A stretch of DNA of 64,000 nucleotides from Paramoeba atlantica (taxonomy: Eukaryota; Protista; Discosea), in assembly GCA_977017575.1 (NCBI GenBank), contig CDRNVI010000087.1, positions 314,571 to 378,570 on the forward strand, written 5' to 3'. The notes below the pieces were generated by a model. The model was not told the DNA's origin and did no database searches. It worked only from the letters and a program-made list of their open reading frames with translations. Positions 10,694-53,498 of the stretch are shown here, in pieces; the first letter of the stretch is position 1; every line of letters begins with the position of its first letter. The translations under genes were made by a program, and so were the position numbers.

Positions 10694-11428
10694 ATGTTTC
10701 GGCCCATTCATGCCGCGGATATTCCAGCGCCGCAAATAGCAAGACGTGCAGCAAAGGTGAGTATAACAAATCTTCCACAAGAATTCCAACTTGAGCAAGT
10801 TGTACGCAATGTTGAAAATCCGAATTCATCATGGACAACATCTACTCCGGCCTGTAAGTGGAGTGGTGTCGATTGTAACAATACCGATAGTGTAATGTCC
10901 ATAACGTGGTGGTCGAGGAAATTAAAAGGTTCGTTAAACTACAGTCATCTGCCCGAAACGATGCACATCTTTTACGCTAATGTTAACGAACTCTCCGGTG
11001 AAGTGCCACTTGAAACGTTTCCTCCGAAGCTGCGTACGTTAAGCCTTCGCAACAATCAGTTGAGTGGAACATTGGACCTGACAGCTCTCCCTCCTAATTT
11101 AAAGACTTTGGTTCTTTCTGGTAACCAATTTACAGGAGAAGTTTGCCTGACCAAATTGCCGTCGGAGCTTCGATACCTTTATCTCGGCAGGAATATGCTA
11201 TCCGGAGACCTTTGCTTCAGAACACTGCCTAAAATGGTTATACTCCGGCTTGAAGAAAATGATTTTTCTGGAAAAATTAGTCTTAGTAGCATTCCATGCT
11301 CATTGGAAGAGTTAAATTTATCAAACGACATAAATCTTTGCGGTAAGGTAAAAGAATATCATATTTCCCCATTGCTGCGCTCTGGCCTGAGGATTGAGAA
11401 CACAAAGATCACACGTTCATTAAAATAG
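10694..11428 (+). CDS. Short LRR protein (copy 1)
   Basis: AAKVSITNLPQEF..SW..ACKWSGVDC cap followed by ~23-aa LPxxLxxLxLxxNxxSGxLDL repeats. Confidence 0.88.
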   Translation: MFRPIHAADIPAPQIARRAAKVSITNLPQEFQLEQVVRNVENPNSSWTTSTPACKWSGVDCNNTDSVMSITWWSRKLKGSLNYSHLPETMHIFYANVNELSGEVPLETFPPKLRTLSLRNNQLSGTLDLTALPPNLKTLVLSGNQFTGEVCLTKLPSELRYLYLGRNMLSGDLCFRTLPKMVILRLEENDFSGKISLSSIPCSLEELNLSNDINLCGKVKEYHISPLLRSGLRIENTKITRSLK

Positions 11429-12000
11429 CTTTTCTTTTAATTTGTGGACAAATTCTCAAGTTCTTTTGTTTGCTTTATATTCCTTACAAATCTAATATAT
11501 TATTATTATAAATTTATAACTACTTGTAAAATAATATTACAATAATATTATTTTTGTCTGTTCGCCTCATATCGTGCCAATTGTAGGCGTTTCAGAGAAA
11601 AACCATCACTGTTTCAGTGTAGAAATGCGATAAGATACATTAGAATCGTGCACTACCGTGCGCTGCCATTTTTCATGATGGCCATCTTTTTGGGAGGGCT
11701 GTATCAAATAATGTACGCCTTGTCACTAGGTTTAGTAGTTTACTTCTGGTGTAAAATCAGTGAATTATGCTTTTTATATGCTTTGCCCGTAACACAGAAT
11801 CGTGACGCCCACTGTACCATTCCCCCTGAAAAAGAAAAAAACATTCGTCTCATGCCCTGTCGTCCATGTATCAGCCTCCTAGCCTCACACACACTTTGTC
11901 AGTGAAAAAATTGAAAAATTGATTGAATTCAAGAAAATATATCCTTTTTATCTTTCCAGAACGTTTGAAGTCTTTTTACCTTTCCCATTCGATATTTTCT

Positions 12001-12804
12001 ATGAGGCTTATTGCACTTTCGAGCGATGTTTCGCTACCACGTTCTGACCACCCTGTCACCTCTGTATCAACGGTAAGTCAGACAATACCGAAAAACACAA
12101 ACAAAGTACGTGCGGGGAAAGTCAGCGCAGTAAATTTACCACAAGAATATCATTTAGCGCGTCTTACTGAAAATGCGGAAAATAAACACGCTTCGTGGAG
12201 TACAGACACACCAGCTTGTAAATGGGAAGGGATAAAGTGTAATGAACAGGGCGAGGTAGAGTACCTCTTTTGGGTTAGGTCAGCTTTCTCCGGCATTTTG
12301 CATTTTGATCATCTTCCACGGTCACTGACGGGTTTGCGCATATACAATACTAAATTTAAAGGGGAGGCTGCATTGAGTTCTCTCCCCAAGGGTCTTGTTG
12401 ATGTCTTTGTGACTTGGAATGAGTTTAGTGGTCCGTTGGACTTAACCTCTCTGCCTGCTTTTCTAGTCCGTTTGAGCTTAAATGATAATAAATTTACGGG
12501 AGGGGTTTGCTTAACTAAGCTTCCAGAGACACTCCAAGAGCTTCGTCTGGCAGATAATTCGCTGACAGGAAGCGTAGACGTGACTGCACTTTCACCGGTT
12601 CTACGTAAGATTAGTTTGCAAAATAATGCTTTTTCAGGGCTAGTTGACTTCTCCCGTCTTCCACCTACGTTAGAAATTATTACATTGGGATGGAATAAAG
12701 ACCTCCGGGGCACAGTGAAGAGGTCAGAGATTTCAACGCGACTGAGATATAATTACAATTTCATCTCCAGTTTCTATGGAACGAAAATTGAAATAACGAA
12801 TTGA
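12001..12804 (+). CDS. Short LRR protein (copy 2)
   Basis: Same cap and repeats; first ATG of ORF 11923..12804 is at 12001. Confidence 0.88.
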   Translation: MRLIALSSDVSLPRSDHPVTSVSTVSQTIPKNTNKVRAGKVSAVNLPQEYHLARLTENAENKHASWSTDTPACKWEGIKCNEQGEVEYLFWVRSAFSGILHFDHLPRSLTGLRIYNTKFKGEAALSSLPKGLVDVFVTWNEFSGPLDLTSLPAFLVRLSLNDNKFTGGVCLTKLPETLQELRLADNSLTGSVDVTALSPVLRKISLQNNAFSGLVDFSRLPPTLEIITLGWNKDLRGTVKRSEISTRLRYNYNFISSFYGTKIEITN

Positions 12805-12904
12805 CAGTGAAGCTTTTCTTTGCTTCATACTAAAAGTGAGGAACATTAATTTTGGATCATAATGATGGAAGTGCTTTATTCGTACTTTATGTTGTACAAT
12901 ATTA

Positions 12905-14838
12905 AACCACCGTCCGGGTTATTATACCTAGGAGGTATAATAAGTGTCCCTAGGTATAATAAGTGTCCCTAGGTATAATAACTTTTCTTTGCGAAAAAGG
13001 GTAAAAAAAATTTCGCGCCGCTTCGCGGCGAGTACGTCTTTACATTGCCCACAAACTCGCATGATACATTGGCTAGTTTTCCTCTTGTGCCTGTGAAAAA
13101 TAATCATGAATTGTACTTCGAAAACGTGCTTGAGTGGGGTGAGGCGCGGGGGTAACTTCGTTTTCTGTAGCTTCGGGGGTGAAAGAATATGAAATGCCAC
13201 GAATATGAATGTTTTCGTGGTTGCTATACCCCAACTGGTTAAAATTCTTGACAATATCAATTTCATATAGGGTTTCTTGGTGGGCTTCACCCATCCAACG
13301 CAACATAAGTTCTGCACCTGCCTTTGATGCGATCTTTCTGTGCCCCTGTTGTAACCAGGGTTGATAATGATTTACGGAGTACTCATGACGAAATCTAGCA
13401 GCGTAGCTTACATCAATGGCCTGGAGAAATTGTGTCATGCCACCGGGTATGACCCCCAATAACATAAATTCACCCATTCTATTTTTCGCAAGATCGGTCA
13501 AATGTCCTCTGGCGCTATCAAATATACTCAAGCATACTTCATCATTAGACAAAAGTGGAGCAATTTGACTCTTCATGAAAGGTATCACGTGCTTGGCCAT
13601 CAGAGATCCAGTAACGACACCCGTTGGACTCTCGAGGACTTGCCATCCGAACGGGTTGCTCACAGTCCAAGGTTTTTTCGCAGAACGTCGCAGAAGAACA
13701 GTACAACGTATTGGCAAAGGAGAATACCCAGCTCCTCGTTTGATGACCGCAACTGAGGCGATGAAAGAACAGCAACGCCTATCCCAATTGGGGTCCTCCG
13801 AAACCATGACGTTCGTGGTTCCGCGTTCGGAGAGCGTTGAATTGGAGTTCATGCTTCCGCTAAATGAAAAGGGTATTTCATCAAAGTTGATGATTATGGC
13901 AATGCACCGAGATAGACGAATAGAGTATAGAAACTGATGAAACCCTTGAATACAAGCTACGATCTGTTCGTGTGTTTTGGTGGTTCGTCTTTGAACAGAC
14001 CGCAATACAATACTGTGTCGTTTCTTCCACTTTGAAAACCATTTTCTGGTTACAGATTCGCCTTTCAGTGTTCGAGCTTTGAGCTTTGTAGTGGCAACTG
14101 AAACGCGGAGGTTTTGCGCTCGAAGACTAGAGAACCATCTATAAAGCTCAGATCCAACATCGTCTTCTCCAACGTTTTCCCCTCTTAATCTTTTACGACA
14201 TCCGTCGCCACGGGATGAATTCTCTGTTTGACGTTTCCAGCTTTGTAGTTGCGAGCGACCGGATAAAAAGACTCGACCTCGTGTAGTAAGGTACAACTCT
14301 CGCTGTAGTTTGGAAAACCACTCTGTCTCGCCTTGTAGTGAACCTAGCAAGCGCATGGCAGTTCGCTTGTCCTTCATTGATATGTCCGTACGTCTTTGCT
14401 TCCCTGCTGGTGATTTTCCCGCGACGGAAGCATTTTTGTTTTGACAATTTTTTAACCGTGCATAGGATTCAAGAAGATTGGCCCTTTCGACGCCAGACAA
14501 AATTTCTGAATTTTCCTCCTCCTCTTGAAATATATTAGAGAAATCTACTTCTTCGAGATCAAGGTCATTTTCGTTGTCGGGTGATTCATTCCCTCCATCG
14601 CCGAACTCTTCGTTCGTGGTATCGGATTCATTGGCATCGCTTGTTTCTGTTTCTCGGTTGCCAGAAATATTATGGAGGGTATCCTCGTAGCACATGTATT
14701 AAATGTATGTTCAAATATATACGTATTCGATGTTTGATCAGCGGTAGGGGGGGGAGGTATAATAAGGACCCTAGGGACACTTATTATACCTAGGAGGTAC
14801 AATAGGTGTCCCTAGGTATAATAACCCGGACTGTGGTT
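12905..14838 (-). mobile_element. Full-length pogo-like element, 1934 bp
   Basis: TA-flanked TIRs AACCAC(C/A)GTCCGGGTTATTATACCTAGG with subterminal repeats at both ends. Confidence 0.9.
13073..14695 (-). CDS. pogo-like DDD transposase, 540 aa, D-D-34-D
   Basis: Tc5-type HTH (LYRWFSSLR..KWFSKWKKRH), INFDEIPF, IFDSARGH, IPGGMTQFLQAIDVS. Confidence 0.88.
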   Translation of the reverse strand: MCYEDTLHNISGNRETETSDANESDTTNEEFGDGGNESPDNENDLDLEEVDFSNIFQEEEENSEILSGVERANLLESYARLKNCQNKNASVAGKSPAGKQRRTDISMKDKRTAMRLLGSLQGETEWFSKLQRELYLTTRGRVFLSGRSQLQSWKRQTENSSRGDGCRKRLRGENVGEDDVGSELYRWFSSLRAQNLRVSVATTKLKARTLKGESVTRKWFSKWKKRHSIVLRSVQRRTTKTHEQIVACIQGFHQFLYSIRLSRCIAIIINFDEIPFSFSGSMNSNSTLSERGTTNVMVSEDPNWDRRCCSFIASVAVIKRGAGYSPLPIRCTVLLRRSAKKPWTVSNPFGWQVLESPTGVVTGSLMAKHVIPFMKSQIAPLLSNDEVCLSIFDSARGHLTDLAKNRMGEFMLLGVIPGGMTQFLQAIDVSYAARFRHEYSVNHYQPWLQQGHRKIASKAGAELMLRWMGEAHQETLYEIDIVKNFNQLGYSNHENIHIRGISYSFTPEATENEVTPAPHPTQARFRSTIHDYFSQAQEEN

Positions 14839-16982: not shown

Positions 16983-17939
16983 ATGACCTCCACAACGTCT
17001 CCCTCCGAGCCTACAAAGCAGACCCCCAAACCCTCCCGTCTCACCCAGCTCCTCTCCGACCTTCTCCTCGGCGGTCTCGTCGGGACAATCTCCAAAACCC
17101 TCATGGCCCCTATCGAGCGTATCAAACTTCTTCTCCAAACTATGGAGAGTCACCCCGACATCCTTAACGGGTCCCAGAAACCCTATAAGGGGATTGTCGA
17201 CTGCGCGACTCGGGTCTACACCGAGCAAGGCCCCAAAGCCTTCTGGCGGGGTAATCTCGTCAACTGCCTACGCTACGCCCCTCAACAAGGCAGCGCGCTG
17301 GCGTTTAACGATTGGATCAATTCCCATTTGTTTCCCCATTACAATTCCAAAACAGATTTTTGGAAAAGTTTTGCCGTGAAGCTCACCGCCGGGGGCCTGG
17401 CCGGGGGGGTCGCGAACACGATCTGCTACCCCTTCGACTTTGCCCGTACCCGGCTGGCGAGTGATGTCAAAGCGGGGAGGCCGCAGTTTGGGGGGATTGC
17501 GGATTGCCTGAGCCAAACGGTGAGGGCTCAGGGGCTGCGGGGGCTCTACACGGGCTGGGGGGTGACGGTCGCGGGGGCGTTCGTGTACCGCGCCGGCCAG
17601 CTGGGCTGCTTCAAGCAGATCCAGGAGAGTAACCCGTGGGCCGGGGACAAGGGGACGAGGGGGGCGGTGAGCGCGTTCGCGGCGGTCACGGTGGCCCGGA
17701 CCGTGGTGATGCCGCTGAACTACCCGTTTGACACCATCCGGCGTCGTATGATGCTGGAGAGTGAGAAACCGAAGGGGATGAGGCGGTATGGGGGGGCGTG
17801 GGGGTGTGCGCGGGAGGTGGTGAGGAGGGAGGGGGTGCGGGGGATGTACAAGGGGATGGTCCCGGAGCTGTTTCGAGGGGTCGGGGGGTCGCTGGTGGTG
17901 GTGGCGTATGACCGGATTAAGGTGATTTTTGAGATGTAG
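16983..17939 (+). CDS. Mitochondrial carrier family ADP/ATP translocase (divergent)
   Basis: Three Px[DE]xx[KR] motifs (APIERIK, YPFDFAR, YPFDTIR) and the AAC-type RRRMM(L) signature; intronless. Confidence 0.92.
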   Translation: MTSTTSPSEPTKQTPKPSRLTQLLSDLLLGGLVGTISKTLMAPIERIKLLLQTMESHPDILNGSQKPYKGIVDCATRVYTEQGPKAFWRGNLVNCLRYAPQQGSALAFNDWINSHLFPHYNSKTDFWKSFAVKLTAGGLAGGVANTICYPFDFARTRLASDVKAGRPQFGGIADCLSQTVRAQGLRGLYTGWGVTVAGAFVYRAGQLGCFKQIQESNPWAGDKGTRGAVSAFAAVTVARTVVMPLNYPFDTIRRRMMLESEKPKGMRRYGGAWGCAREVVRREGVRGMYKGMVPELFRGVGGSLVVVAYDRIKVIFEM

Positions 17940-18498: not shown

Positions 18499-19173
18499 AT
18501 GACGTCTCATGTAATGGGTCTTTTGCACTGTGCTGACCAGGATTTGAAGGAAAACGGTACAAAAAAGAGTGCACTCTATCCCGGGTCTAAGATACGCGGC
18601 ACCGATCTTCCCATCGAGTATGATTTAGCGCGGCTTGTCAGAGGCATAGAAAACCCTCGTAAATCCTGGACGACAGAGTGTCCTGGATGTCTGTGGGAAG
18701 GAGTTAAGTGTGACAAGAATGGAACTGTGACAGATATCAGGTGGACGTATAACACTCTTTGCGGCTCATTAGACCTCGGATATCTTCCTTCTCAGTTAAA
18801 AGCATTTCGCGCTTACCGCAACAAGCTTTCCGGAGATTTTCCGTTTTCCGTTTTGCCTGAAACGTTAGAGACGCTATTAATACAGGAGAACAACTTTCAT
18901 GGAACCTTCAATTCTTACGATTTGCCTCCGTTGTTGGAAGTTTTGAACATTGAGAAAAACCGATTTTCAGGATACGTTGACTTCTTTGCCTTTCCAGCCT
19001 CGTTGAGGTTTGCGTATATAAGTGGTAATGAAATGTTGCAAGGAAAATTGGATGTCATAGATTTGCCGAAAGACATATTTTATGACGTTAACGGAACTCA
19101 AGTCATTGTTAGCAATGGCCCGTTAAGTCGATGTGATATAGAAAACTTGATGAACCTTGGGTGGGGTTATTAA
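18499..19173 (+). CDS. Short LRR protein (copy 3)
   Basis: LPIEYDL..SW..CLWEGVKC cap followed by LRRs. Confidence 0.88.
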   Translation: MTSHVMGLLHCADQDLKENGTKKSALYPGSKIRGTDLPIEYDLARLVRGIENPRKSWTTECPGCLWEGVKCDKNGTVTDIRWTYNTLCGSLDLGYLPSQLKAFRAYRNKLSGDFPFSVLPETLETLLIQENNFHGTFNSYDLPPLLEVLNIEKNRFSGYVDFFAFPASLRFAYISGNEMLQGKLDVIDLPKDIFYDVNGTQVIVSNGPLSRCDIENLMNLGWGY

Positions 19174-19616: not shown

Positions 19617-19966
19617 TTTAGAAAATATTGCCTACGTGAAAACAGGCTGACAATTTAGAGTTTTAGATAATTTAGAGTTTTCACCATGCACAATAATATT
19701 TTTTTAGATGATTATTATTAGCGATAGAGGGAGAAGTAGCGTATTTATGCTGTAGCCTTCAAAGTGACCGAATTTAGTTGCTAGTTTTTTTTACTAACTA
19801 TTTTACAAAGTCAAAGTCTTTTACAGGAGTACCTTTGAGCAGCTATTTTCTGTTCGCACACTCGCCAAACGCGAATCAGACTATAATTTCCCAACTCTAC
19901 TATAAGCTGTATAGAACTCAATGATCTTTCAAATAAGGCTAACTATCTTTCACAGATTCCTTGGGA

Positions 19967-20688
19967 ATGATTAGCAGATCTCGGCCCGCTAAAGTAAGTC
20001 ATGCTGTTCTTCCACAAGACTACAAATTAGAGAAAGTCTTAGAAAACGTCGAATGTTAGCATTCGTCCTGGAGCCTGTCGCAGCACTAGTGTACTTGGCA
20101 TGGTGTCAAATATGATGCACACCATCATATATGCAAAATGGATTAGTCTTTTGATTGGGACGAACTGAATCTGCATGGGAAATTAGATTTTTCTTACTTT
20201 CCCTGTAGTCTACAATTGCTTGACTTAAATTTCAATAACGTACAACAAAAATTACCTTTGCATGCATTGATCCCTAAGCTACACACCTAGATCTTAGAAA
20301 ACAACCACGTTTTCGCCCCCGTAGAATTGGAATCGCTTCCCAGAACACTGAAAATAGTAAATCTCACCCGAAATCAGTTTTCCTGGAGGTATGCCTTACT
20401 GCACTTCCGCTCCACGTTGAAGAGCTTAGGATTTACCAAAATGAACTCACGGGGACGCCGGACCTTACTGCTCTCCCGTCTGGGAGGTTAAGACTGGATT
20501 TCACATCGAACCGATTTTCAGGGAATAATGAATTCTCACATCTTGAATTGTTTTCAGACACACTTGAATTGTTTTCGTTAGGTAGGAACTTGTCACTGGA
20601 AGGTGAAGTGATGCGAGAGTGTCTTCTGAAACCGTTGCAAGACGACAAGGCTATGTTTTACAGTACGAATATTAAGGTAATGGATTGA
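19967..20688 (+). pseudogene. LRR pseudogene (copy 4)
   Basis: MISRSRPAKVSHAVLPQDYKL..*HSSW..*CTWHGV, then LRR-coding segments with stops and frameshifts. Confidence 0.8.
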
Positions 20689-20867: not shown

Positions 20868-21443
20868 ATGAATTGTACTTTGAAGACGCGGCCTGCAAAA
20901 GTAAGCGGTGTTGCTCTTCCCCAGGAGTACGATCTGGTGCGTCTCGTCCTAGATGTGAAGACACACCATTCCACGTGGAGCATTGACACAGACGCATGTG
21001 AGTGGTGTGGAATCACATGCGATATGCAAAAAAAAGTAGCACAAATCAACTGGGTAGCGCGTCGTCTGCGTGGTGCATTAAACTGGAAGTACATCCCCCA
21101 TACAGTGCACTATATACACTTTGGTAGTAACGTGTTGTCCGGCAATGTTGATTTTTATCATCTTCCATCCACACTTCGAACGCTGAATTTGTACCAAAAT
21201 CATTTTACGGGAACCCCAAACTTTGTGCATTTACCTGAAATCACAACTATTGATTTAAGCAATAATTGTTTTAGGGGGTACATGGATCTTGATTTACTTC
21301 CGGAGTCCGTTACTTATTTTTACGTCCTGGGGAATAAAGGACTCAGTGGTACATTGAATGTGAAACGCTACCGTAGTTTGTGTTATGACGTTACGAGTAC
21401 GCAAATTACGACAAGCAATGATATTTTGTTTCGGTATTATTAA
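20868..21443 (+). CDS. Short LRR protein (copy 5)
   Basis: RPAKVSGVALPQEYDL..TW..ACEWCGITC followed by LRRs; ATG at 20868 in ORF 20829..21443. Confidence 0.88.
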   Translation: MNCTLKTRPAKVSGVALPQEYDLVRLVLDVKTHHSTWSIDTDACEWCGITCDMQKKVAQINWVARRLRGALNWKYIPHTVHYIHFGSNVLSGNVDFYHLPSTLRTLNLYQNHFTGTPNFVHLPEITTIDLSNNCFRGYMDLDLLPESVTYFYVLGNKGLSGTLNVKRYRSLCYDVTSTQITTSNDILFRYY

Positions 21444-21758: not shown

Positions 21759-22475
21759 ATGTTTTCCACCTTTTCCGCCGCAGATGCAAGCAACGAGTCG
21801 TACACAACGAAACGTGCAGCAAAAGTGAGCAAGACGAATCTTCCGCAAGAATACGAACTTGCACAACTGGTGCGTAATATTGAGAAGCCACACTCTTCGT
21901 GGAATACATCGACATCTGCCTGTAAGTGGCGCGGTGTATATTGTAACGGAGAAGAAGATGTCCCGATGTTTGGCTTCGTCATGAAAGCAACAACAGGTAA
22001 TATAACGAGTATAAAGTGGTCTATGAGGCAACTAACCGGTTTCTTAAATTTTGATTATCTACCGAAAACATTGAACGAATTTAAACTTGAATTCAACAAA
22101 CTTTCTGGGGAAGTGCTGCTTCGCACTTTTCCTTCAAAATTGAGTTATCTAAACATGCATCGAAATCAATTTAGTGGAACATTGGACTTAACAGCTCTGC
22201 CTCCGAATTTGAACACTTTGATCCTTTCTAGTAACCAATTTACAGGTGAAATTTGCTTGAATAATTTGCCCTCAGGTTTAAAACGCCTTTCTCTTCGCGA
22301 GAATAAATTATCCGGAAAGCTTTTAATCAGCGCAAACATTCCATTATCATTAGAATCTCTTGATTTGTCATTCAATGTAAAGCTGTCAGGCGAGGTGAAA
22401 AAAGAGCTCCTTCCAGAAAAATTACGCTACGGAATTGGGATTACTAGAACCATGGTCACGCTTTTATCAGATTAG
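21759..22475 (+). CDS. Short LRR protein (copy 6)
   Basis: RAAKVSKTNLPQEYEL..SW..ACKWRGVYC followed by LRRs. Confidence 0.88.
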   Translation: MFSTFSAADASNESYTTKRAAKVSKTNLPQEYELAQLVRNIEKPHSSWNTSTSACKWRGVYCNGEEDVPMFGFVMKATTGNITSIKWSMRQLTGFLNFDYLPKTLNEFKLEFNKLSGEVLLRTFPSKLSYLNMHRNQFSGTLDLTALPPNLNTLILSSNQFTGEICLNNLPSGLKRLSLRENKLSGKLLISANIPLSLESLDLSFNVKLSGEVKKELLPEKLRYGIGITRTMVTLLSD

Positions 22476-41691: not shown

Positions 41692-43032
41692 AACCCCGCG
41701 TCACCAATAAGTGACCCCCCCCCTTATTTTTAGCACAGGGGGTCGTGGGGGGGTTATCATACCACGTTGTCGTTCAAAATTTTGAGATCTGTACGTTCCC
41801 GCTGTTTTTAGCTCATTTTAAAAATTTAAAATTCAGTAAAAAAAAAATTTAATTTTTTCAACCTTTTTTCAAAAATGCCAAAATCACCATATCGACTCCC
41901 AAGAGGGGGGCTGACTTCTAGTGGAAAGGTTCTTTTAAAGATGAGGCACGGACAAGGAGTATCAATAAAAGAGATAGCCCGTGATTTCAACGTTTCTAGA
42001 AGGATAGTTAAAAAATATTTGAACGAAAAAAAAACTACCCCAGTATACACTTTGAGTCCTGAGCGAAAAAAAATAATGAAAACTCGTAAAACGAAAATTG
42101 AGAAGATAATAACCCCTCTTGACCCCGCTGGAGTACCGAGACTCAATTCATCAAGGCGCATAGCAGCCCAATTGAAGAAAAAGAATATACAAATTTCAAA
42201 AAGAACTGTACAGAGAGACTTATCATCCCTGGATTACAGTTATGCCGCTCGACCGCTATGCCAAGGGCTTACCGAACGACAAAAAGTAAAAAGAGTTCAA
42301 TTTGCGTTGAATTACAATATAGATACTTCCCGTGTCATCTTTACAGACGAAAAAATATTTGATACGAATGATGGCAGAATAAAAATGTGGGTAAGGCGCG
42401 GTCAAAAAGCAGCCCCGCGTCAAAAAGTACGTTGGGCACCAAGATGCCAAGTTTGGGGTGCTGTAGGGGTGGGGTGGAGGTACTCGGTAATTCTACAAAA
42501 TGACACATCTATTACAAGTGAGACGTACATAGAAACATTAAAAGAGGTAGATTTCCCCCCTAATCGTATTTTTCAGCAAGATGGGGCAACGGCACACACT
42601 GCTCGTGCCTCAAAGGAGTACATTGAAAGCGCAATGAGTGAACTTCTGAAAAATTGGCCCCCCAACTCACCAGATCTTTCCCCAATAGAAAACGTCTGGT
42701 CTATGGTCCAAGGGGCGGTGGACGAACAGACCCTATCGGATAAGCCTTCACTCATCCGATGTGTACGCAAAGCGCGGTCTCGCTTGTCTCAAAATGTGAT
42801 CGACAAAACGGTCTTAAGCTTTGACTCACGCCTTAAGGAGTGTATAAGATTGAAAGGCGAAAAAGTGAAAAAATGGTAATTCCTCAATAAAATATACGTA
42901 TTCGCTTCTTTTAGTTTCATTCCTTCTCGCGCAAAGTCTTTGTGTTGAGATCTGCAAAATGCAACAAAAATCAGCTCAAACGGACACTTGTACGAAAAAA
43001 AAGTGGGGGGTCACTTTTCATGACGCGGGGTT
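41692..43032 (+). mobile_element. Full-length Tc1/IS630-like element (family F), 1341 bp
   Basis: TA-flanked short TIRs AACCCCGCGTCA..TGACGCGGGGTT. Confidence 0.88.
41875..42879 (+). CDS. Tc1/IS630-superfamily transposase, intact, D-D-35-E
   Basis: HTH (IKEIARDFNVSRRIV), IFTDEKIF, FQQDGATAH, WPPNSPDLSPIENVW. Confidence 0.93.
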   Translation: MPKSPYRLPRGGLTSSGKVLLKMRHGQGVSIKEIARDFNVSRRIVKKYLNEKKTTPVYTLSPERKKIMKTRKTKIEKIITPLDPAGVPRLNSSRRIAAQLKKKNIQISKRTVQRDLSSLDYSYAARPLCQGLTERQKVKRVQFALNYNIDTSRVIFTDEKIFDTNDGRIKMWVRRGQKAAPRQKVRWAPRCQVWGAVGVGWRYSVILQNDTSITSETYIETLKEVDFPPNRIFQQDGATAHTARASKEYIESAMSELLKNWPPNSPDLSPIENVWSMVQGAVDEQTLSDKPSLIRCVRKARSRLSQNVIDKTVLSFDSRLKECIRLKGEKVKKW

Positions 43033-44048: not shown

Positions 44049-44765
44049 ATGATTGTTGTATCACTCTCTCTGGTTTTCTTTGTACGTACGCGTGATCCTC
44101 ACGAAAGGCCCCAAAATCGACGTAACGAGGAATGTGTATTACAAACTTCTACAGATGATAAAGCCGATTGTCGTCCAATAGTTTACTCACGTCCAGCAAA
44201 ACAACGTGGAGCTGAGATACCTTTGGAGTACAACTTAGCGCGGCTGATACAAGAGGTTCGTAACCCTCATCCCACGTGGAACACTTCATGGCCTGGATGT
44301 GAGTGGAATGGTGTGTTTTGTGATGCATCCAAAGATAAAATTACACTCAGTTGGTCCTATCGAGATCTGCGGGGTTGCGTCCAGCTGAAATATTTACCTT
44401 CCAAGTTATTACGTTTCTACGTTCGTGCAAACTTCTTATTTGGAGGATTTCAGTTCGTCCACTTTCCGATTTGTTGTGGATATATCACACTTTATGGAAA
44501 CAGCTTCAGTGGTACGCCTGGCTTTCACTTGATGCCTCCACACATGGAATACCTTGACATGAGCTATAACGAACTAGCTGGTAGTGTTGATTTTTCAAAT
44601 CTCCCTTCTACTTTATCACACATGTACTTACGAGGCAATGCCGAGCTCAGTGGAAAGCTAGACGTTTCAGGACCATTGAAGAATTTGTTATATGATATTG
44701 AAGGCACAAGGATATCCGTAAAAAGCGGTGAACTCTGCCGCTTGAAATCAAGTTTCGTACACTAA
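44049..44765 (+). CDS. Short LRR protein (copy 9)
   Basis: RPAKQRGAEIPLEYNL..TW..GCEWNGVFC followed by LRRs; hydrophobic first 12 aa. Confidence 0.87.
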   Translation: MIVVSLSLVFFVRTRDPHERPQNRRNEECVLQTSTDDKADCRPIVYSRPAKQRGAEIPLEYNLARLIQEVRNPHPTWNTSWPGCEWNGVFCDASKDKITLSWSYRDLRGCVQLKYLPSKLLRFYVRANFLFGGFQFVHFPICCGYITLYGNSFSGTPGFHLMPPHMEYLDMSYNELAGSVDFSNLPSTLSHMYLRGNAELSGKLDVSGPLKNLLYDIEGTRISVKSGELCRLKSSFVH

Positions 44766-44782
44766 AAATTCTAACATTATAG

Positions 44783-47470
44783 TTGCGGTGGTTGTATAAC
44801 TACCGCTCTACCCTCGATTATTGAAAAAAAAGTGAACAAAAACAGTGAAAATATAAAGAGGAACACAGTAAAAAATATAATAGAAGAAAAAAATATAAAA
44901 GGGGGCTCCGGTGGTCCAAAATTGAAAAAAAAATTGAAAAAAATGACGGGTCCATGGGGGGGTCTATGGGGCGCATACCGCACGAATTTTTGTAAAAAAA
45001 CTATTTTTCGAAAAAAACCCTCAGAAGGGGTAGCCGGGGTGTTGGCGCGCATTTTCTACCCCCCTACCCGGGGGTGACCCCCCCGCGTACCGTCACCCCC
45101 CCCTCACTTGTCCCGACGAAAAGGCCAAAAAAGCGGAAAAGGCGGATAAGTCGCGTGGTAGGACAAGTCACGTAGCATCAAGAGGAATTGTATGACACAT
45201 TTTTGTATACATCCGTATAAATGAAAAAACCCTTTTTCGAACTTATTAGGTCGGCTTCAGTGCCATCAGCGAGATGGCAGTGCCAGGGAAGACCACGAGG
45301 AGGTCCCGACCTTACTTCCCCATTTCGGTTTTGTGCCCAACTTTCAGAGGAAGTTGGGTTTTTTACAGAAACGGTAACTATCGTTTGAGCAGCTTTCCGA
45401 ATATACCGTGAACGATAGAGATAAGATGAGCCCACGTACCAATAGATTAAATACATTGTATATGAATACAAATGTTGTTTACAAGGGAAAAACAATATAA
45501 ACAGAAAATACACTTTAGATTTATTCTGCTTTATTATAATACAGCTATCATTTTTAATAAAACAGTTTCTGATCTTTAATGAAGCATACAACGTAGTAAT
45601 TAGCATGCGTTCCGGTCCCTTAAAGCTGCGTGCTGCACGCCATATAGTTTTTGTGCTGCACTTGCGTGCTGCACTTGTCCATATAGTTTTTCTTAAAAGT
45701 TTTGTTAACGCTTGTGTCCATAAGTTGTACTAATGGGGTACATCCGCCAGGAATAAACAAAATATCGATATGCATTTCCTTCAAGTATAGAAGAAGTTCC
45801 TTAGTGCGATGTGCCGCGTAAAGATCTAGGACAAACAAAGTCTTGTAAGGTGGGTACTTTGATCGGTCGCAAAACTCAAATTTGGCCCACTGTAAAAATG
45901 TTACGCCAGTCGTCCAACCAGATTTCGACGTAGTGCTGGTACATTTATATTTCACGCTGGCTCGCTTGGTTTCTTGTGCAATGGGTCCAACTTCTGATTG
46001 CGTGCTCCAAATCAGGTGAGGTGGGTTCATCAGGTGCGACCAGGTGTCATCACAATTTTTCGAAGAACGACACCACATCCAACAAGTTGTGATGTTACGC
46101 TCTTTTCCAGTTGTACATATCTTGACGCGCTTGGTTCCACGAAATTCATATGTTAGGCTCCCAGGCAACAGGTGTTTCGTCTCCATGAACAATTACTTTG
46201 TAACCGCTGCAGTCTGTATTCATGAGAGAAAGCATATCTTTCCATTTTCGCACTTTTTCTTCTGCATCCACAGGAAGTAACTGGGTGCAACCGTTCACCC
46301 GGCGAACAGAAATGTTTGCCCACTTACAAAAGCGCAACCAGAATGCCTGTTGGCCTCGGTCAGTAAGGTTCCGGAAGTGATCAGAAACTTCGTTGAACTA
46401 TTTGACCATCATGCTCTTGGTCACTGAAACTAACGACTCCCTCAACACCTGCACAGTTTCCAATCCACCCTGATACACCTCACGATTTCGGAGTGGAGGG
46501 TGATATTGGAATTTGTTTCCATACCCGAGATGCACAAGTTGCTGCCATTCTTTTTTCTTTGAATAAATTTTGCTTACAGTGCTACCGTCGACCTTGTATT
46601 TTTGTGCCACTTTCGCTTGACTTTTTCCGTTGTCAAGCGCAGCACAAATATTGCGCTTTTGCTGGATGGTGATGTCAATGCGTATTTTTCGCTCAGATGC
46701 ACTCTGTGATACGGAAACCTGCTGAGCATTTATGACACTTCCAGACGTGTCTCCCACATGGGGTATTACCGCTGTGTTTTCAGCTTTCGAAGTGATGGGT
46801 ACTAGTACTTGACTAGCGTTGAATGGTTCATAGTTTCGCTTCTTTCTAGACATCTTGATTCAAATAGTTTTTAAAGAGATAATATCTGTAGACTGAATGT
46901 CGTACTTTGTAGAGATAGTCGTAACTGCTTTCTATTAAATACAACTGTAATAGTATGATATACTATTACTGTAATAGTATGTAATAGTAATAAAATTTAA
47001 TATGTTAGATACAACTGTATCTGCAACTAAAAAATACGAAAAATATAATTTTCAAAAATGACCAAGGGCAGGGGACTACCACGTGACATATCCGCCCTCA
47101 AATTCTCAAAAGCGGATATGTCACGTGGTAGGACAAGTGAGGGGGGGGTGACGGTATGCGGAGGACGCGTCCTCCAAGTTCGGATTCTTTTGGAAAAAAA
47201 GAATTGAAAAGAAATTCAACTTGGCGAAAAAAATATTTTTCCAAAATCGTTCCCCCTATTGTATTTTGACAGTTTGAGACCCATAGTAGCTTTCTCCGCA
47301 GTTGTTTTCGCCAGATATCCCTTCTTCGAGCCGTGGTATGCACCTCAAAATGACCCAATTCTGACTAAAAAAGGTGAAAAAATATTTTTCGGACCCCAAG
47401 GTTCCTTTTTCTGTCGAAAGATTGGTGTGGGTTCCAACGATAGTGCGCACTGTCCGTGTTGTGAGACATT
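44783..47470 (-). repeat. Repeat family C, inverted copy, split by the 45090-47154 pogo element
   Basis: Rejoining the flanks at the TA restores CCCCGCG-TA-TGCGGAGGACG, matching the reverse complement of 3722-3765. Confidence 0.75.
45090..47154 (-). mobile_element. pogo/Tigger-like element, 2065 bp, with frameshifted D-D-35-D transposase
   Basis: TA-flanked TIRs CCGTCACCCCCCCCTCACTTGTCC; ORF pieces 46398..46853 (psq-type HTH), 46146..46337 (HGDETP) and 45620..46192 (VLDLYAAH..IPGGCTPLVQLMDTS). Confidence 0.88.
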
Positions 47471-48020: not shown

Positions 48021-48038
48021 TTAGACGACTAATAATTA

Positions 48039-50449: not shown

Positions 50450-50550
50450 TAAAAATTAATGAGAGGGAGAGAACACCTTCGAATTTCAATGCATCAAAAG
50501 TAAAATGTCCATGAAATTTCTAGATAAAGAAATTAAACGTTTTTTCTCTG

Positions 50551-51284
50551 ATGTTGCACACGGTTTCTGTTGCGGATATTGAAGACCCACGCATGACGCG
50601 ACGTGCAGCTAAAGTGAGCACAACTAATCTTCCACAAGAATATAGTCTTAAGCGACTTATACATGAAATTAAAATACGCATCCCTCGTGGAGTACATCAA
50701 CCCCGGCTTGTGAGTGGGATGGCGTCTCCTGTAACAAAGATGATGAGATATTGGCCATAAATTGGATCACGAAAAAACTGACAGGTTCGTTCACGTTTGA
50801 TTACCTTCCCAAAACATTATACAACTTTTATGTCTATAATAACCAACTTTCTGGGGAAGTACCACTGGGTACTCTTCCCTCCACTTTGCGCACTTTCAGT
50901 CTTTGGAATAATAAATTTAGCGGGCCATTGGACTTGACCGCTCTCCCGCTGAATTTGAAGACTTTGATGCTTTCAGGTAACCAATTTACAGGAGAAGTTT
51001 GTTTAATTAAATTACCCTTAGGGTTAACCAGTCTCTGTCTTGACAGGAATCAATTATCAGGTGAACTTTGTTTCAGTGCACTCCCAAATCTGAATATTCT
51101 GCGTCTTCACGATAATAAATTTTCCGGAAACGTTAATTTAAAAAGCCTTCCGGGTACGTTAGAGGACCTCGATTTGTCATCGAACGCTAAGTTGTGCGGC
51201 GAGATAGAGGAACACCATCTTCCTAAAAACTTGCGCCTCGGATTCATGATTTTCGGCACTAATATTACACTATTAACGGTGTAG
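50551..51284 (+). pseudogene. LRR gene (copy 10) with a 1-bp frameshift in an A-run near 50670 (may be a sequencing error)
   Basis: Frames 50551.. (RRAAKVSTTNLPQEY) and 50751..51284 join if one A is added to ATTAAAATACG. Confidence 0.82.
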
Positions 51285-51626
51285 TGTTGCGTGAAGTTGT
51301 ACATACCTAGTTGTAATGTAGTTGTACTAAAGAAGTTGTATTCAAATGCTGAGTTATTCTTTCAAAAGAACGGGTGATAATTGCTGTCCCCACCCGTTTT
51401 TGCGCACCTCGTTTTTTGTTGTTGAAAAGTGCGCCTACATAAAAACAACTACACCTTAGCTCAGTGTGCGCTTAAAAGGGGTCTTCCCGGGTGTGCTTAA
51501 ACGGGAGCCGGTAGTGTACGAACCTTATAATTCAATGCATTGTGCATTCTCTCTGTTGAGATCCATTAGTTTGTTTTTATACGCTATGTTCGATTTTTAT
51601 TACGGCTACATTCGATTTACAAAGTC

Positions 51627-52187
51627 ATGAATATTCCTAAGAGCACAACACGTGTAGGTAAGGTCAGGGGCATGTTTCTCCCTCCGGAATACGAACTCAC
51701 AAAGTTTATTAGTGATGTTCAACATCTGCATGAGTCATGGAATACGACTACACCAGCATGTGAGTGGATTGGTGTGACGTGTAGTGAGCAGGGTGAAGTT
51801 AGCCGCATTGCTTGGAGTGGTCGAGGGCTGTCCGGTACATTGCACTGGGGTTCGATACCACGTTCTGTAACATACCTCGAACTGAGCGGCAACCAATTGA
51901 GCGGGTGCGTAAGTTTCGCGTTGCTTCCTCCTGTACTTGAAAGAATGTGGCTCCAAGGCAACAGGTTTACAGGTGAGCTTCACCTTGAGGACCTGCCGCC
52001 TACCATGCTAATTTTGAACATCTCTCGAAATCAGTTCACTGGCTTTGTTGATCTTTCTTTTCTGAAGGATTCAAAAATTACTGGATTCGATATAACGGGG
52101 AATACAAATCTCCAAGGATCAATTCCGGAAGGCATTCAACCTAAAACTGTTTGGTGGGGCATTCCGGCTGATTGGATTCAGAAGTAA
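51627..52187 (+). CDS. Short LRR protein (copy 11)
   Basis: RVGKVRGMFLPPEYEL..SW..ACEWIGVTC followed by LRRs. Confidence 0.88.
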   Translation: MNIPKSTTRVGKVRGMFLPPEYELTKFISDVQHLHESWNTTTPACEWIGVTCSEQGEVSRIAWSGRGLSGTLHWGSIPRSVTYLELSGNQLSGCVSFALLPPVLERMWLQGNRFTGELHLEDLPPTMLILNISRNQFTGFVDLSFLKDSKITGFDITGNTNLQGSIPEGIQPKTVWWGIPADWIQK

Positions 52188-52772
52188 GATACAAAAAATA
52201 TATTGCCCAAACTTTGATTGTCACAGCTTCATAAACCTCAACAACTTTATGAGCTTGTATCAGTAATCCCCCATTCTTTACATAGGACAATTTACATAAA
52301 CCCCTGAGCAAAATAAGGCACTCCCTCCAAAATCTCAATGCTTCGCTCGTTTGAGCTAATTTTTGTAGCATGTTATAGATCTCAACACAAAGAGTTTGCG
52401 CGTTAAGAAACGGAACAAGAAATCCCAAATGCGTACATTTGAAAGTCTGATTACAGGGAAGAAATTATGTTGTGTCAAAAAAGAATCGTGTTAATTTCTG
52501 GGATTAACACGACCTTTGTTGACACAACATATGTTGCCATAGGGGTTGGGGGTATGCTATCGGCCCTGGGTCGATACCATACCCCCCCGGTATGGTACAG
52601 GTCACAGGTATGCTAAACCGGAACCCCGTTAATTTTGTAGGCCAAGTTTTACGAAATTTAGATTCCCCAGCATTAGCTGATCCCCCCTGCATATGAGCTG
52701 ATTCCCCCTGCATAACTTTAATACCCATTAAAGCAAATTAATACCTTGAATATTTTATCTAATTTATGTGCA

Positions 52773-53498
52773 ATGGATTCCCAAGCGCCATCCACGCGCC
52801 CGTCGAAGGTTGGTGCATTGAATTTACCACAAGAAATGGATCTTGAGCGGCTCATTAGTGGTTTGCACACTCGTCATGAGAGCTGGAATTCTAACATTTC
52901 TGCTTGCAAATGGAAAGGCATCAAGTGTAATTCAGAGGAGAAAGTTACTGAAATAAGGTGGAGCCGTCAAAAGTTGAGTGGATCCATGAAGTTTGCATGT
53001 ATTTTAATGTCCGTTGAGACGTTCGATATTGAATACAACAGCATATCAGGGGAAAACGTCCTAAGTGAACTTTTCCCATTAGTAAAGTTAAGGCATTTCT
53101 TTCTGGGAGGAAACAAATTTACAGGCAATCCGGATCTGACAAGACTCCCGAAGCTTTCTACCGGCGCATGGATGGAAACAAACGAATTGTCTGGTGATAT
53201 ATGCCTTACACAGTTGCCCGTCGATCTGGTACATCTTGATGTTAGTGATAATTTCTTGACTGGAAAATTAGATTTCGGGGCACTCCCGGACACTCTGGAA
53301 GCTTTATACTTGTCTGGAAACGAATTCGAAGGAATGATAGATTTATTAGTCCTTCCGGAGAAGCTAGATACCCTTACTTTAGATAAAAATCCGCTTCTGG
53401 AAGGTACAATAGTCGCAAGCAAGCTCCACCCGCGATTAAAAAAAAGTATTCAATTATTGAGATGTTCTTCGAATACCAAACTTGTAGTCGTAGATTAA
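52773..53498 (+). CDS. Short LRR protein (copy 12)
   Basis: RPSKVGALNLPQEMDL..SW..ACKWKGIKC followed by LRRs. Confidence 0.88.
   Translation: MDSQAPSTRPSKVGALNLPQEMDLERLISGLHTRHESWNSNISACKWKGIKCNSEEKVTEIRWSRQKLSGSMKFACILMSVETFDIEYNSISGENVLSELFPLVKLRHFFLGGNKFTGNPDLTRLPKLSTGAWMETNELSGDICLTQLPVDLVHLDVSDNFLTGKLDFGALPDTLEALYLSGNEFEGMIDLLVLPEKLDTLTLDKNPLLEGTIVASKLHPRLKKSIQLLRCSSNTKLVVVD

What the first reader, a model, noticed from the sequence alone, without database searches (positions are those of the whole stretch)
10694..53498. Twelve short, soluble LRR genes, all on one strand, interleaved with a transposon nest
Seen: 9 intact, 1 single-frameshift and 2 pseudogene copies in 43 kb, all + strand and intronless, while neighbouring TEs lie in both orientations. 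Each has a plant-receptor-like W..C.W.GV.C cap and about 4-7 repeats of ~23 aa with a conserved scaffold and highly variable exposed positions. There is no TM, kinase or NB domain and mostly no signal peptide. Known: LRR-only repertoires under birth-and-death evolution act in recognition (plant RLPs/PGIPs, lamprey VLR). Inference: a diversified recognition or host-symbiont interface repertoire in a protist; the uniform strand suggests polycistronic (kinetoplastid-like) transcription or tandem duplication without inversion. This is the best candidate in the window for an undescribed system.
Basis: partly seen in the sequence, partly recalled or inferred. Interest (0 to 1): 0.75.

Follow-up and report, generated by a model that had tools for sequence, protein, structure and literature searches.

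The report
One-strand array of small LRR genes
The window holds 13 same-strand copies of a small leucine-rich-repeat protein family that has grown to hundreds of genes in a Perkinsela-like kinetoplastid; the shared strand reflects how this genome arranges all its genes, and what the proteins bind is unknown.

Summary
The window has 13 LRR loci, all on the + strand: 9 intact, 1 with a single frameshift and 3 decayed or truncated. They are interleaved with pogo and Tc1 transposons lying in both orientations.

Each protein has a plant-type LRRNT_2 cap, 4-7 repeats of 23 residues and a C-terminal cap. None has a TM segment, kinase or NB domain, and only one has a signal-peptide-like N-terminus.

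The N-cap profile finds 1865 candidate loci in the 45.7-Mb assembly.

The host is a kinetoplastid-type protist. It has a spliced-leader sequence, intronless tandem HSP90 arrays, and an HSP90 80% identical to Perkinsela and 99% identical to a transcript from a Paramoeba atlantica culture. Unrelated kinase genes show the same strand runs, hundreds of kb long. The uniform strand is therefore a genome-wide property, typical of polycistronic gene clusters, reinforced by head-to-tail duplication.

Named relatives exist: "leucine-rich repeat protein" in Perkinsela sp. CCAP 1560/4, and transcripts from Paramoeba cultures. I found no paper on the family.

Selection is purifying overall (omega 0.42). 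Concave-face positions evolve near neutrality (0.72, CI 0.44-1.19), so positive selection is not shown.

Other agents of this scan noted one-strand LRR arrays elsewhere in this genome.

The parts
10694..11428 (+). Intact LRR gene, 244 aa (long form)
   Evidence: ORF. Pfam LRR_4/LRR_8/LRR_1. 93% identical at DNA level to its C157 counterpart.
12001..12804 (+). Intact LRR gene, 267 aa
   Evidence: ORF from the first ATG. LRRNT_2 over its cut-off. 100% identical to the public ENA protein P0187. No counterpart on C157.
16983..17939 (+). Mitochondrial carrier gene, co-directional with the LRR genes, intronless
   Evidence: Pfam Mito_carr, E 1.9e-62. A 40-nt polypyrimidine tract lies just upstream.
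18499..19173 (+). Intact LRR gene, 224 aa (short form)
   Evidence: ORF. Family alignment. 98.4% identical to the C157 copy.
19943..20685 (+). Decayed LRR pseudogene (in-frame stops and a frameshift)
   Evidence: tblastn hits in two frames. Three-frame translation.
20868..21443 (+). Intact LRR gene, 191 aa (short form)
   Evidence: ORF. Pfam LRR_4 and LRRNT_2. No counterpart on C157.
21759..22475 (+). Intact LRR gene, 238 aa
   Evidence: ORF. LRRNT_2 over its cut-off. No close counterpart on C157.
25966..26391 (+). LRR gene allele with its 5' end deleted (the last ~140 codons only)
   Evidence: Translation. The C157 copy is intact. The upstream flank sits about 0.35 kb before the gene on C157, so C87 carries a deletion of about 0.7 kb.
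26877..27713 (+). Intact LRR gene, 278 aa; the copy used for the structure model
   Evidence: AF2 pLDDT 87, LRR solenoid, disordered residues 1-45. Foldseek top hits are plant LRR ectodomains. phmmer against PEPR1 gives 1.3e-29.
34079..34231 (+). Fragment of an LRR gene's C-terminal cap (about 50 codons)
   Evidence: tblastn. Translation. Identical on C157.
44049..44765 (+). Intact LRR gene, 238 aa; the only window copy with a signal-peptide-like N-terminus
   Evidence: ORF. Hydropathy 2.88 over 9 residues in the N-terminus. No counterpart on C157.
50533..51284 (+). LRR gene with a single frameshift after the cap helix
   Evidence: Two frames. 99.2% identical to an intact C157 copy; the alignment lengths differ by one base.
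51627..52187 (+). Intact LRR gene, 186 aa (short form)
   Evidence: ORF. LRRNT_2 over its cut-off. 100% identical on C157.
52773..53498 (+). Intact LRR gene, 241 aa
   Evidence: ORF. LRRNT_2 over its cut-off. 98.9% identical to the C157 copy. An MMETSP transcript (P0330) matches this subfamily at 64%.
13073..14695 (-). pogo/Tc5-type DNA transposase ORF (transposon, antisense to the gene array)
   Evidence: Pfam HTH_Tnp_Tc5 + DDE_1.
29384..31036 (-). pogo-type DDE_1 transposase ORF
   Evidence: Pfam DDE_1, E 1.8e-10.
35565..36323 (-). pogo-type DDE_1 transposase fragment
   Evidence: Pfam DDE_1.
41875..42879 (+). Tc1/mariner transposase ORF
   Evidence: Pfam DDE_3 + HTH_Tnp_Tc3_2.
45620..46853 (-). 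Broken pogo-type transposase (CENP-B_N and DDE_1 pieces)
   Evidence: Pfam.
55936..64000 (+). Bacterial tail of the contig (queA 3' part, radical-SAM gene, polyprenyl synthase, dnaG); not part of the LRR array
   Evidence: Pfam. ORFs. Homology to the sister contig C157 ends at 55890, and C157 continues with more LRR genes.

Best explanation
This is a segment of a very large, lineage-specific multigene family in a Perkinsela-like (prokinetoplastid) kinetoplastid.

Each gene encodes a soluble protein of about 190-280 aa with four parts:
- a short variable N-terminus;
- a complete plant-type LRRNT_2 cap (helix LPxEYxLxxLV, then SW...PACxWxGVxC);
- four to seven 23-residue plant-specific-type LRRs that form a curved solenoid;
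- a C-terminal cap.

Shown:
- The genes sit head to tail inside long directional gene clusters, the kinetoplastid form of polycistronic organisation. Unrelated housekeeping genes share the same strand.
- The family grows by tandem and block duplication.
- It shrinks by frameshifts, deletions and decay. Transposons of either orientation accumulate between the genes.
- Gene content differs between the two haplotype contigs.

Inferred:
- The strand uniformity arises because only sense-oriented duplicates are expressed in a one-directional transcription unit, and because unequal crossing-over makes direct repeats.
- The proteins act as binding modules. The conserved scaffold presents a fast-evolving concave surface to as yet unknown ligands, most likely inside the cell or after non-classical release.
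For: Anatomy:
- Pfam LRRNT_2 plus LRR families.
- Family alignment and 23-residue unit entropy profile.
- AF2 model with pLDDT 87. Its best structural matches are plant LRR ectodomains SRF6, PEPR1, ERL1, PGIP and SERK2 at E about 1e-8. phmmer against PDB gives PEPR1 at 1.3e-29.
- No TM segment; a signal-peptide-like N-terminus in 1 of 9 window copies.

Genome context:
- SL-like sequence CAGTTTCTGTACTTTGTTG at 11 places, against 0 for the control pattern.
- Intronless HSP90 in 2587-bp tandem arrays.
- HSP90 80% identical to Perkinsela and 99% to EukProt EP00008 Paramoeba atlantica.
- 29 of 29 LRR loci on + in 124 kb of C87, and 18 of 18 co-oriented on C157.
- In the lists, every multi-hit contig but two (C54, C44) has its LRR hits on a single strand.
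- Pkinase hits show the same contig-scale runs. In 7 of 7 cases where a kinase lies within 10 kb of an LRR hit, the strand is the same.
- All long minus-strand ORFs that could be classified in the 124 kb are transposon-derived.

Turnover:
- Four 2922-bp units differ by 0-2 nt.
- Deep branches separate neighbouring genes.
- Pseudogenes and deletion alleles.
- 4 of 13 loci are absent from the sister contig.

Functionality:
- Pooled omega is 0.42 (0.34-0.51); scaffold 0.29, concave positions 0.72.
- Homologues are retained in the reduced 9.5-Mb Perkinsela genome (genome size from PMC5601477).
- Family members occur as MMETSP transcripts (P0330, P0342, P0348, P0364, P0373).
Against: - No RNA data for this genome were available. 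Polycistronic transcription, trans-splicing of these genes and expression of the window copies are inferred, not shown.
- Upstream polypyrimidine-AG signals are clear for some copies (12001) and weak for others (10694).
- The conserved Cys pair of the cap is typical of extracellular, disulfide-bonded LRR domains. That fits poorly with a cytosolic location.
- A short hydrophobic N-terminus followed by (A/C)(A/D)D is conserved between this genome, Perkinsela and the MMETSP transcripts. It might be an unrecognised targeting signal.
- Omega was estimated by pairwise counting on 8 pairs, not by site models.
- No ligand is known.
Confidence: 0.68

Rival explanations
1. The proteins are secreted or surface-exposed, like Leishmania PSA/GP46 or plant PGIPs. 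On this view they form a variable coat, adhesin set or host-directed effector set, exported by a short or non-canonical N-terminal signal that my heuristic does not recognise.
For: - The cap keeps the two cysteines that form a disulfide in extracellular plant LRR domains.
- The closest structures are all extracellular ectodomains.
- Bodo saltans 'GP46-like surface antigen', which carries a clear signal peptide, is a distant relative at E 1.8e-29.
- A short hydrophobic N-terminus plus an acidic motif is conserved across species.
- Copy 44049 and C157 copy H83094 have signal-peptide-like N-termini.
Against: - Eight of 9 window copies begin with 0-8 hydrophobic residues, too few for a classical signal peptide. 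There is no C-terminal hydrophobic or GPI-type tail.
- The hydrophobic-looking in-frame codons upstream of the ATGs are T-rich, stop-free DNA (a strict pyrimidine tract only upstream of some copies), not coding sequence with an ATG.
- GP46-like proteins score no better against the family profile than plant receptors do.
Confidence: 0.15
2. The array is mostly non-functional. On this view LRR copies were multiplied passively with the transposon-rich DNA around them and are now decaying, so the repertoire has no collective function.
For: - 4 of 13 window loci are broken.
- Transposons fill the spacers.
- Gene content differs between haplotype contigs.
- Very recent pairs have omega near or above 1 on a handful of changes.
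- Other agents report retrotransposons that insert into LRR codons in this genome (s1-403548, s1-396119; not verified here).
Against: - Pooled omega is 0.42, with the confidence interval excluding 1, and scaffold positions are at 0.29.
- Old paralogues with dS about 1 still have intact ORFs and omega 0.24-0.39.
- The family is retained in the streamlined Perkinsela genome and is transcribed in MMETSP data.
Confidence: 0.07
3. The uniform strand is only a by-product of head-to-tail tandem duplication of one founder gene and says nothing about transcription.
For: - Perfect direct repeats of 2922 bp.
- Duplicated two-gene blocks on C87: W-29986/W-18389 and W-3835/W-2871.
Against: - Neighbouring genes belong to deeply diverged lineages with branch lengths above 1, so the array is old. 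Yet no inversion has occurred in 29 loci.
- The unrelated mitochondrial carrier, and kinases elsewhere, share the strand of the adjacent LRR genes. Strand runs span hundreds of kb.
Confidence: 0.08
4. The fragments and pseudogenes are donor cassettes for somatic assembly or gene conversion into expressed genes, as in VLR-like or VSG-like systems, giving variegated expression.
For: - Partial copies occur (25966-26391, 34079-34231).
- The family sits in a kinetoplastid, a group known for gene-conversion-driven antigenic variation (general knowledge).
Against: - The partial copies have simple explanations. One is a deletion allele whose other haplotype is intact. Another is a decayed full-length gene.
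- Most copies are complete genes with their own start codon.
- No incomplete 'germline' gene flanked by cassettes was seen.
Confidence: 0.02

Closest known systems
Perkinsela sp. CCAP 1560/4 'leucine-rich repeat protein' / XU18_2095 (P0338, P0340, P0354, P0356) and Paramoeba-culture transcripts (P0348, P0364, P0373, P0342, P0330)
   Same: - Same length (249-289 aa) and same order of parts: a short hydrophobic N-terminus with an acidic motif, a cap helix (LxQQxLMELxI against LPQEYxLxxLV), C.W.GV.C, then 23-residue LRRs with an LP..L start and (S/T)Gx(L/I)DL.
- Profile E-values of 4e-69 to 7e-48.
- These are true family members.
   Different: - Only 26-38% identical to window copy 26877 (the query).
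- Only five 90%-identity clusters (P0338, P0340, P0354, P0356, P0358) turned up from the 9.5-Mb Perkinsela genome. Here the N-cap profile gives 1865 first-look candidates in 45.7 Mb.
- The public annotation is generic, and I found no publication on the family.
Plant LRRNT_2-capped, plant-specific-type LRR proteins (PGIP 1OGQ; SERK, SRF6 and PEPR1 ectodomains; receptor-like proteins)
   Same: - The N-cap matches Pfam LRRNT_2.
- The repeat consensus LxxLxLxxNx(L/F)(S/T)G is shared.
- The model has the second strand per repeat typical of plant LRRs.
- Best sequence and fold matches in the PDB.
   Different: - The repeat is 23 residues, not 24, with (L/V)(D/C)(L/F) where plants have IP.
- No signal peptide, TM segment or kinase.
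- Only 4-7 repeats.
- Intronless genes in a kinetoplastid directional cluster.
- About 20-28% identity.
Leishmania promastigote surface antigen PSA/GP46 and Bodo saltans GP46-like / bodonin-related LRR proteins (PMC4728078)
   Same: - A kinetoplastid multigene family built of plant-type LRRs, thought to bind other proteins.
- B. saltans GP46-like scores E 1.8e-29 against the family profile.
   Different: - PSA/GP46-type proteins have a signal peptide, longer LRR arrays and, by general knowledge, a Thr/Ser-rich region, a Cys-rich region and a GPI anchor or TM segment. The B. saltans sequence (567 aa) shows the signal peptide and long array.
- The present family has none of these.
- It is no closer to GP46-like proteins than to plant receptors.
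Short plant-like LRR genes listed as 'Bodo-specific' in the first B. saltans survey (PMC2621209, Table 2: adjacent 948-bp and 483-bp genes, best hits to plant receptor kinases)
   Same: Small LRR-only genes lying next to each other in a kinetoplastid, with plant receptor kinases as best database hits.
   Different: I did not have those sequences, so homology to this family was not tested. No expansion was reported there.

Membership tests
Pfam LRRNT_2-capped plant-specific-type LRR proteins | N-terminal cap matching PF08263 with the W...C.W.GV.C motif and two cysteines | tested here: met
   PF08263 is over its cut-off in 5 of 10 copies and just under in 3 of the other 5; the remaining two had no LRRNT_2 hit. 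W30, C37, W39 and C44 of the cap are invariant in 19 sequences.
Pfam LRRNT_2-capped plant-specific-type LRR proteins | Tandem LxxLxLxxNxLSGxIP-type repeats of 24 residues | tested here: inconclusive
   The core LxxLxLxxNx(L/F)(S/T)G is present in 92 distinct units. However, the period is 23 and IP is replaced by (L/V)(D/C)(L/F).
Pfam LRRNT_2-capped plant-specific-type LRR proteins | Extracellular location (signal peptide) | tested here: not met
   Only 1 of 9 window copies has a signal-peptide-like N-terminus by hydropathy. No dedicated predictor was available.
Polygalacturonase-inhibiting proteins (PGIP) | Secreted protein of about 10 LRRs with Cys-rich flanks on both sides | tested here: not met
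   4-7 repeats, no signal peptide, and a C-cap without a Cys cluster. The fold similarity to 1OGQ is only TM 0.62/0.56.
Leishmania PSA/GP46 | Signal peptide, LRR array, Thr/Ser-rich and Cys-rich regions, GPI anchor | tested here: not met
   None of the non-LRR parts is present. Only a distant profile match to the B. saltans GP46-like protein.
Perkinsela-type small LRR protein family (unnamed) | Protein of about 190-290 aa: short hydrophobic N-terminus with an acidic motif, cap helix, C.W.GV.C, 23-residue LP..L-type repeats | tested here: met
   Profile E-values of 4e-69 to 7e-48 against Perkinsela proteins. The sequences show the same order of parts.
Kinetoplastid polycistronic (directional) gene cluster | Long runs of unrelated genes on one strand with rare strand switches | tested here: met
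   LRR, mitochondrial carrier and kinase genes are co-oriented. Runs span hundreds of kb, with switches seen on C54, C44, C2, C12, C29, C39 and C40.
Kinetoplastid polycistronic (directional) gene cluster | Spliced-leader trans-splicing of each mRNA | not testable with these tools
   A kinetoplastid-type SL sequence exists in the genome, but no RNA data were available. The upstream polypyrimidine-AG signals are variable.
Kinetoplastid polycistronic (directional) gene cluster | Intron-poor genes and tandem arrays of housekeeping genes | tested here: met
   HSP90 lies in 2587-bp arrays with uninterrupted ORFs. Kinase hits on kinetoplastid contigs have no internal stops.
Lamprey VLR-like somatically assembled LRR receptors | An incomplete germline gene flanked by partial LRR cassettes used for assembly | tested here: not met
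   Copies are complete genes. The partial ones are a deletion allele, a decayed gene and a stray C-cap fragment.

The most novel reading that the evidence does not exclude
The small LRR proteins may form a diversified recognition repertoire of a eukaryotic endosymbiont (a Perkinsela-like organism living inside Paramoeba). On this reading they are delivered by the conserved short N-terminal motif to the symbiont surface or into the host cytoplasm, or they meet the host cytoplasm that the symbiont ingests. Their gene content varies between haplotypes, and elsewhere in this genome the family is reported to be a target of site-specific retrotransposons. That would make it an LRR-based interface or immunity-like system in a eukaryote-in-eukaryote symbiosis.
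Probability: 0.15. Interest if true: 0.8.

Novelty: new member of a known kind. Interest (0 to 1): 0.42.

Why it matters
Large LRR-only families are known from several protists, and homologues of this one are already in public annotation, so the kind is familiar.

What is new is the scale. The N-cap profile finds up to about 1,800 candidate loci in a 45.7-Mb two-haplotype assembly. Only five hit clusters turned up from the reduced Perkinsela genome.

The design is also unusual. An extracellular-type, Cys-capped plant LRR module is found without a signal peptide.

If the organism is indeed a Paramoeba endosymbiont, the family is an obvious candidate for host-symbiont contact. It would also be a tractable case of birth-and-death evolution inside polycistronic units, where regulation cannot act through individual promoters.

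For annotation, the result explains the strand uniformity and flags a chimeric contig end.

Tried and rejected
- Retrotransposon insertion at 25966: I asked whether the 5'-truncated copy marks an insertion at an LRR codon, as other agents reported elsewhere in this genome. The hairpin-ended flank is single-copy, and it lies about 0.35 kb upstream of the intact gene on C157. It is therefore a plain deletion of about 0.7 kb.
- Hidden signal peptides: I considered that the hydrophobic in-frame codons upstream of the ATGs might be signal peptides. They have no ATG and are T-rich, stop-free DNA (a strict pyrimidine tract only upstream of some copies), so they are better read as 5' flanks.
- Bodo saltans as host: rejected on G+C (about 40% here against 50.9%), and the LRR family's named relatives are Perkinsela proteins.
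- Perkinsela sp. CCAP 1560/4 itself as host: rejected. That genome is 9.5 Mb with 47% G+C, and its HSP90 is only 80% identical.
- Non-coding RNAs: Rfam and tRNA scans of the window found nothing inside the LRR region.
- Literature: searches for MMETSP0151, Perkinsela plus LRR and Paramoeba plus LRR found no description of the family.
I therefore could not enlarge the sample for selection tests or map other arrays.

Full report
**1. What is in the window**

A tblastn search with the ten long LRR ORFs finds 13 homologous loci between 10694 and 53498. All are on the + strand and there are none elsewhere in the window.

Nine are intact ORFs when read from the first ATG: 10694, 12001, 18499, 20868, 21759, 26877, 44049, 51627 and 52773.

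The four broken loci are as follows:
- 50533-51284 has one frameshift just after the cap helix.
- 19943-20685 is a decayed copy with several stops and a frameshift.
- 25966-26391 is the last ~140 codons of a gene.
- 34079-34231 is a 50-codon C-terminal scrap.

Between the genes lie pogo/Tc5 transposase ORFs on the - strand and Tc1/mariner ORFs on the + strand. A mitochondrial carrier gene lies on + at 16983-17939.

**2. Anatomy of the proteins**

Pfam finds LRRNT_2 together with LRR_1, LRR_4 and LRR_8, and no other domain.

Alignment of 27 copies from this contig and its sister contig shows four parts:
- a variable N-terminus of 0-50 residues;
- a conserved module, RxxKVxxxxLPxEYxLxxLVxxxENPxxSWxTxTPACxWxGVxCN, which is a full plant-type cap of helix, loop and two cysteines;
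- four to seven repeats;
- a C-terminal cap ending in ..T.I....

Ninety-two distinct repeat units give a 23-residue consensus, LPxxLxxLxLxxNx(L/F)(S/T)Gx(L/V)(D/C)(L/F)xx. Entropy is below 2.1 bits at all but one scaffold position (2.4 bits at +6) and 3.2-3.8 bits at the x positions.

An AlphaFold model of the 278-aa copy has pLDDT 87. Residues 1-45 are disordered. The rest is a regular solenoid with two short strands per repeat.

Its best PDB matches are plant LRR ectodomains: SRF6, PEPR1, ERL1, PGIP and SERK2. By sequence, PEPR1 scores 1.3e-29.

No 19-residue window reaches a TM-like hydropathy. The two C157 exceptions lie in upstream extensions, not in the family's conserved regions. Only 44049 has a signal-peptide-like start.

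The hydrophobic-looking codons just upstream of several ATGs contain no ATG. They are T-rich, stop-free DNA; a strict pyrimidine tract is seen only upstream of some copies.

**3. The organism**

- The assembly is 45.7 Mb in 248 contigs, and the window is the last 64 kb of contig C87.
- A kinetoplastid-type spliced-leader core (CAGTTTCTGTACTTTGTTG) occurs 11 times, against 0 for the control pattern.
- Cytosolic HSP90 is intronless and sits in 2587-bp tandem arrays. Only one cytosolic type is present.
- This HSP90 is 80% identical to Perkinsela sp. CCAP 1560/4, 76% to Trypanosoma, and 99% to a transcript filed under Paramoeba atlantica (EukProt EP00008, MMETSP0151).
- Most genes occur on two contigs with equal scores, so two haplotypes are assembled apart.
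- A canonical actin, and kinase hits interrupted by stops, occur only on single high-numbered contigs. That suggests some DNA of a second eukaryote in the assembly.

My reading is a Perkinsela-like kinetoplastid, plausibly the endosymbiont of a Paramoeba. It is not the published 9.5-Mb, 47% G+C Perkinsela genome. The exact identity is unresolved.

**4. Why one strand**

The array is far larger than 43 kb. In the 124 kb of C87 ending with the window there are 29 LRR loci, all on +. On C157 there are 18, all co-oriented.

Genome-wide, the full-length query gives 182 matches out of 2440 first-look candidates. The 56-column N-cap profile gives 1865 candidates. All 150 that were scored have E of 2.5e-22 or better.

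In those lists every contig with several hits has them on a single strand, except C54 and C44.

Protein-kinase genes, which are unrelated to the LRR family, show the same pattern:
- C40 is all + over 450 kb, C39 is all -, and C21 is all +.
- Switches occur at a scale of hundreds of kb on C2, C12, C29 and C44.
- In the seven places where a kinase lies within 10 kb of an LRR gene, the strands agree.

In the 124-kb stretch the only long minus-strand ORFs I could classify are transposases or reverse transcriptases.

The uniform strand is thus the normal architecture of this genome, directional gene clusters as in other kinetoplastids. Transposons ignore that architecture. Head-to-tail duplication adds to it: four consecutive 2922-bp units differ by 0-2 nt. 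Transcription itself was not observed.

**5. Turnover**

C157, read in reverse, is collinear with the window in four blocks at 96-99.6% identity. Comparing the two:
- Nine of the 13 window loci have counterparts there at 93-100% identity.
- Four have none (12001, 20868, 21759, 44049).
- The frameshifted 50533 copy is intact on C157.
- The fragment at 25966 is a deletion allele of about 0.7 kb; the gene is intact on C157.

A tree shows deep lineages, with branches above 1 substitution per site, interleaved along the array. Recent duplicates sit at the tips. This is birth-and-death evolution with presence/absence variation.

**6. Selection**

Nei-Gojobori counts were pooled over eight independent close pairs (pooled dS 0.15).

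| Site class | Omega | 95% CI |
|---|---|---|
| Whole genes | 0.42 | 0.34-0.51 |
| Scaffold positions | 0.29 | 0.18-0.50 |
| Outside the repeats | 0.36 | 0.27-0.48 |
| Five concave-face positions | 0.72 | 0.44-1.19 |
| Concave-face positions against the common dS | 0.98 | 0.68-1.35 |

Older pairs (dS about 1) have omega 0.24-0.39 and still have intact ORFs.

The genes are therefore under constraint. Their exposed face changes at about the neutral rate. Positive selection is neither shown nor excluded.

**7. Relatives**

An exhaustive profile search with the N-cap finds 304 clusters (at 50% identity) at E of 1e-10 or better. Nearly all are proteins of 140-320 aa (median 238), and most come from unnamed ENA assemblies. 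One of them is 100% identical to the 12001 copy.

A profile of the whole protein finds these named relatives:
- 'leucine-rich repeat protein' and XU18_2095 of Perkinsela sp. CCAP 1560/4 (E 4e-69 to 7e-48);
- 'Leucine-rich repeat protein' of Paramoeba aestuarina, and other MMETSP transcripts.

A further MMETSP transcript, P0330, came from a cluster look-up.

These relatives share the whole design, including a short hydrophobic N-terminus followed by (A/C)(A/D)D.

More distant matches are plant receptor-like proteins (1e-33 and weaker) and the Bodo saltans GP46-like surface antigen (2e-29).

The family is therefore real, transcribed in related cultures, and already carries a generic annotation. 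I found no paper that treats it. An early B. saltans survey lists adjacent small plant-like LRR genes in a table; whether they are homologous was not tested.

**8. Function**

Shown: a soluble LRR solenoid with a conserved scaffold and a variable concave face; many intact genes under purifying selection; transcripts from relatives.

Inferred: the proteins are binding modules.

Their location is the main open point. The absence of a classical signal peptide argues for a cytosolic location. The conserved Cys pair and the conserved N-terminal motif argue that some form of export cannot be dismissed.

**9. Limits**

- There were no RNA data and no signal-peptide predictor.

**10. Other agents**

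Other agents of this scan reported one-strand LRR arrays, and retrotransposons inserted at LRR codons, elsewhere in this genome. I used these reports as leads only. The one candidate I could test in this window was a simple deletion.

Noticed in passing
window 55890-64000: The contig ends in about 8 kb of bacterial genes: the 3' part of queA from 55936, a radical-SAM gene, polyprenyl synthase, dnaG and a DUF805 RNA motif. Homology to sister contig C157 stops at 55890, while C157 continues with seven more LRR genes. This is most likely an assembly chimera.
   Followed up: yes
C87:262383-274802 (L005-L007; window coordinates -52188 to -39769): Five LRR genes lie in a tandem array with a period of 2922 bp. 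The first four units differ by only 0-2 nt, so the amplification is very recent or the units are being homogenised.
   Followed up: partly
N-termini of family members (window 10694, 21759, 26877; L005:7812; P0338, P0340, P0364): A short motif is conserved between this genome, Perkinsela sp. and Paramoeba-culture transcripts, although overall identity is only about 30%. It is M, then 5-10 hydrophobic residues, then (A/S/C)(A/C/D)D, ahead of the cap. It is too short for a classical signal peptide and its role is unknown.
   Followed up: partly
G000 contigs C163, C151, C156, C148, C164, C178, C190: Canonical actin, and kinase hits interrupted by stops, occur only on these single unpaired contigs. 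The kinetoplastid contigs have only divergent actin-like genes. This suggests that DNA of a second, intron-bearing eukaryote (the host amoeba?) is in the assembly, and that the kinetoplastid may lack conventional actin.
   Followed up: partly
window 16940-16982: A run of more than 40 nt of pure pyrimidine runs right up to the ATG of the mitochondrial carrier gene, with no AG in between. The trans-splice acceptor rule of this organism is not obvious from the sequence.
   Followed up: no
L007:3619-8205 (window coordinates -36381 to -31795): An intact 1528-aa ORF with a reverse-transcriptase domain (non-LTR retrotransposon type) lies on the + strand inside the LRR array.
   Followed up: no
L001:1478-1530: An SL-like sequence preceded by an A-run and followed by a pyrimidine tract and AG lies just upstream of an ORF. 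It looks like one of the SL-headed retroposed elements that other agents described.
   Followed up: no
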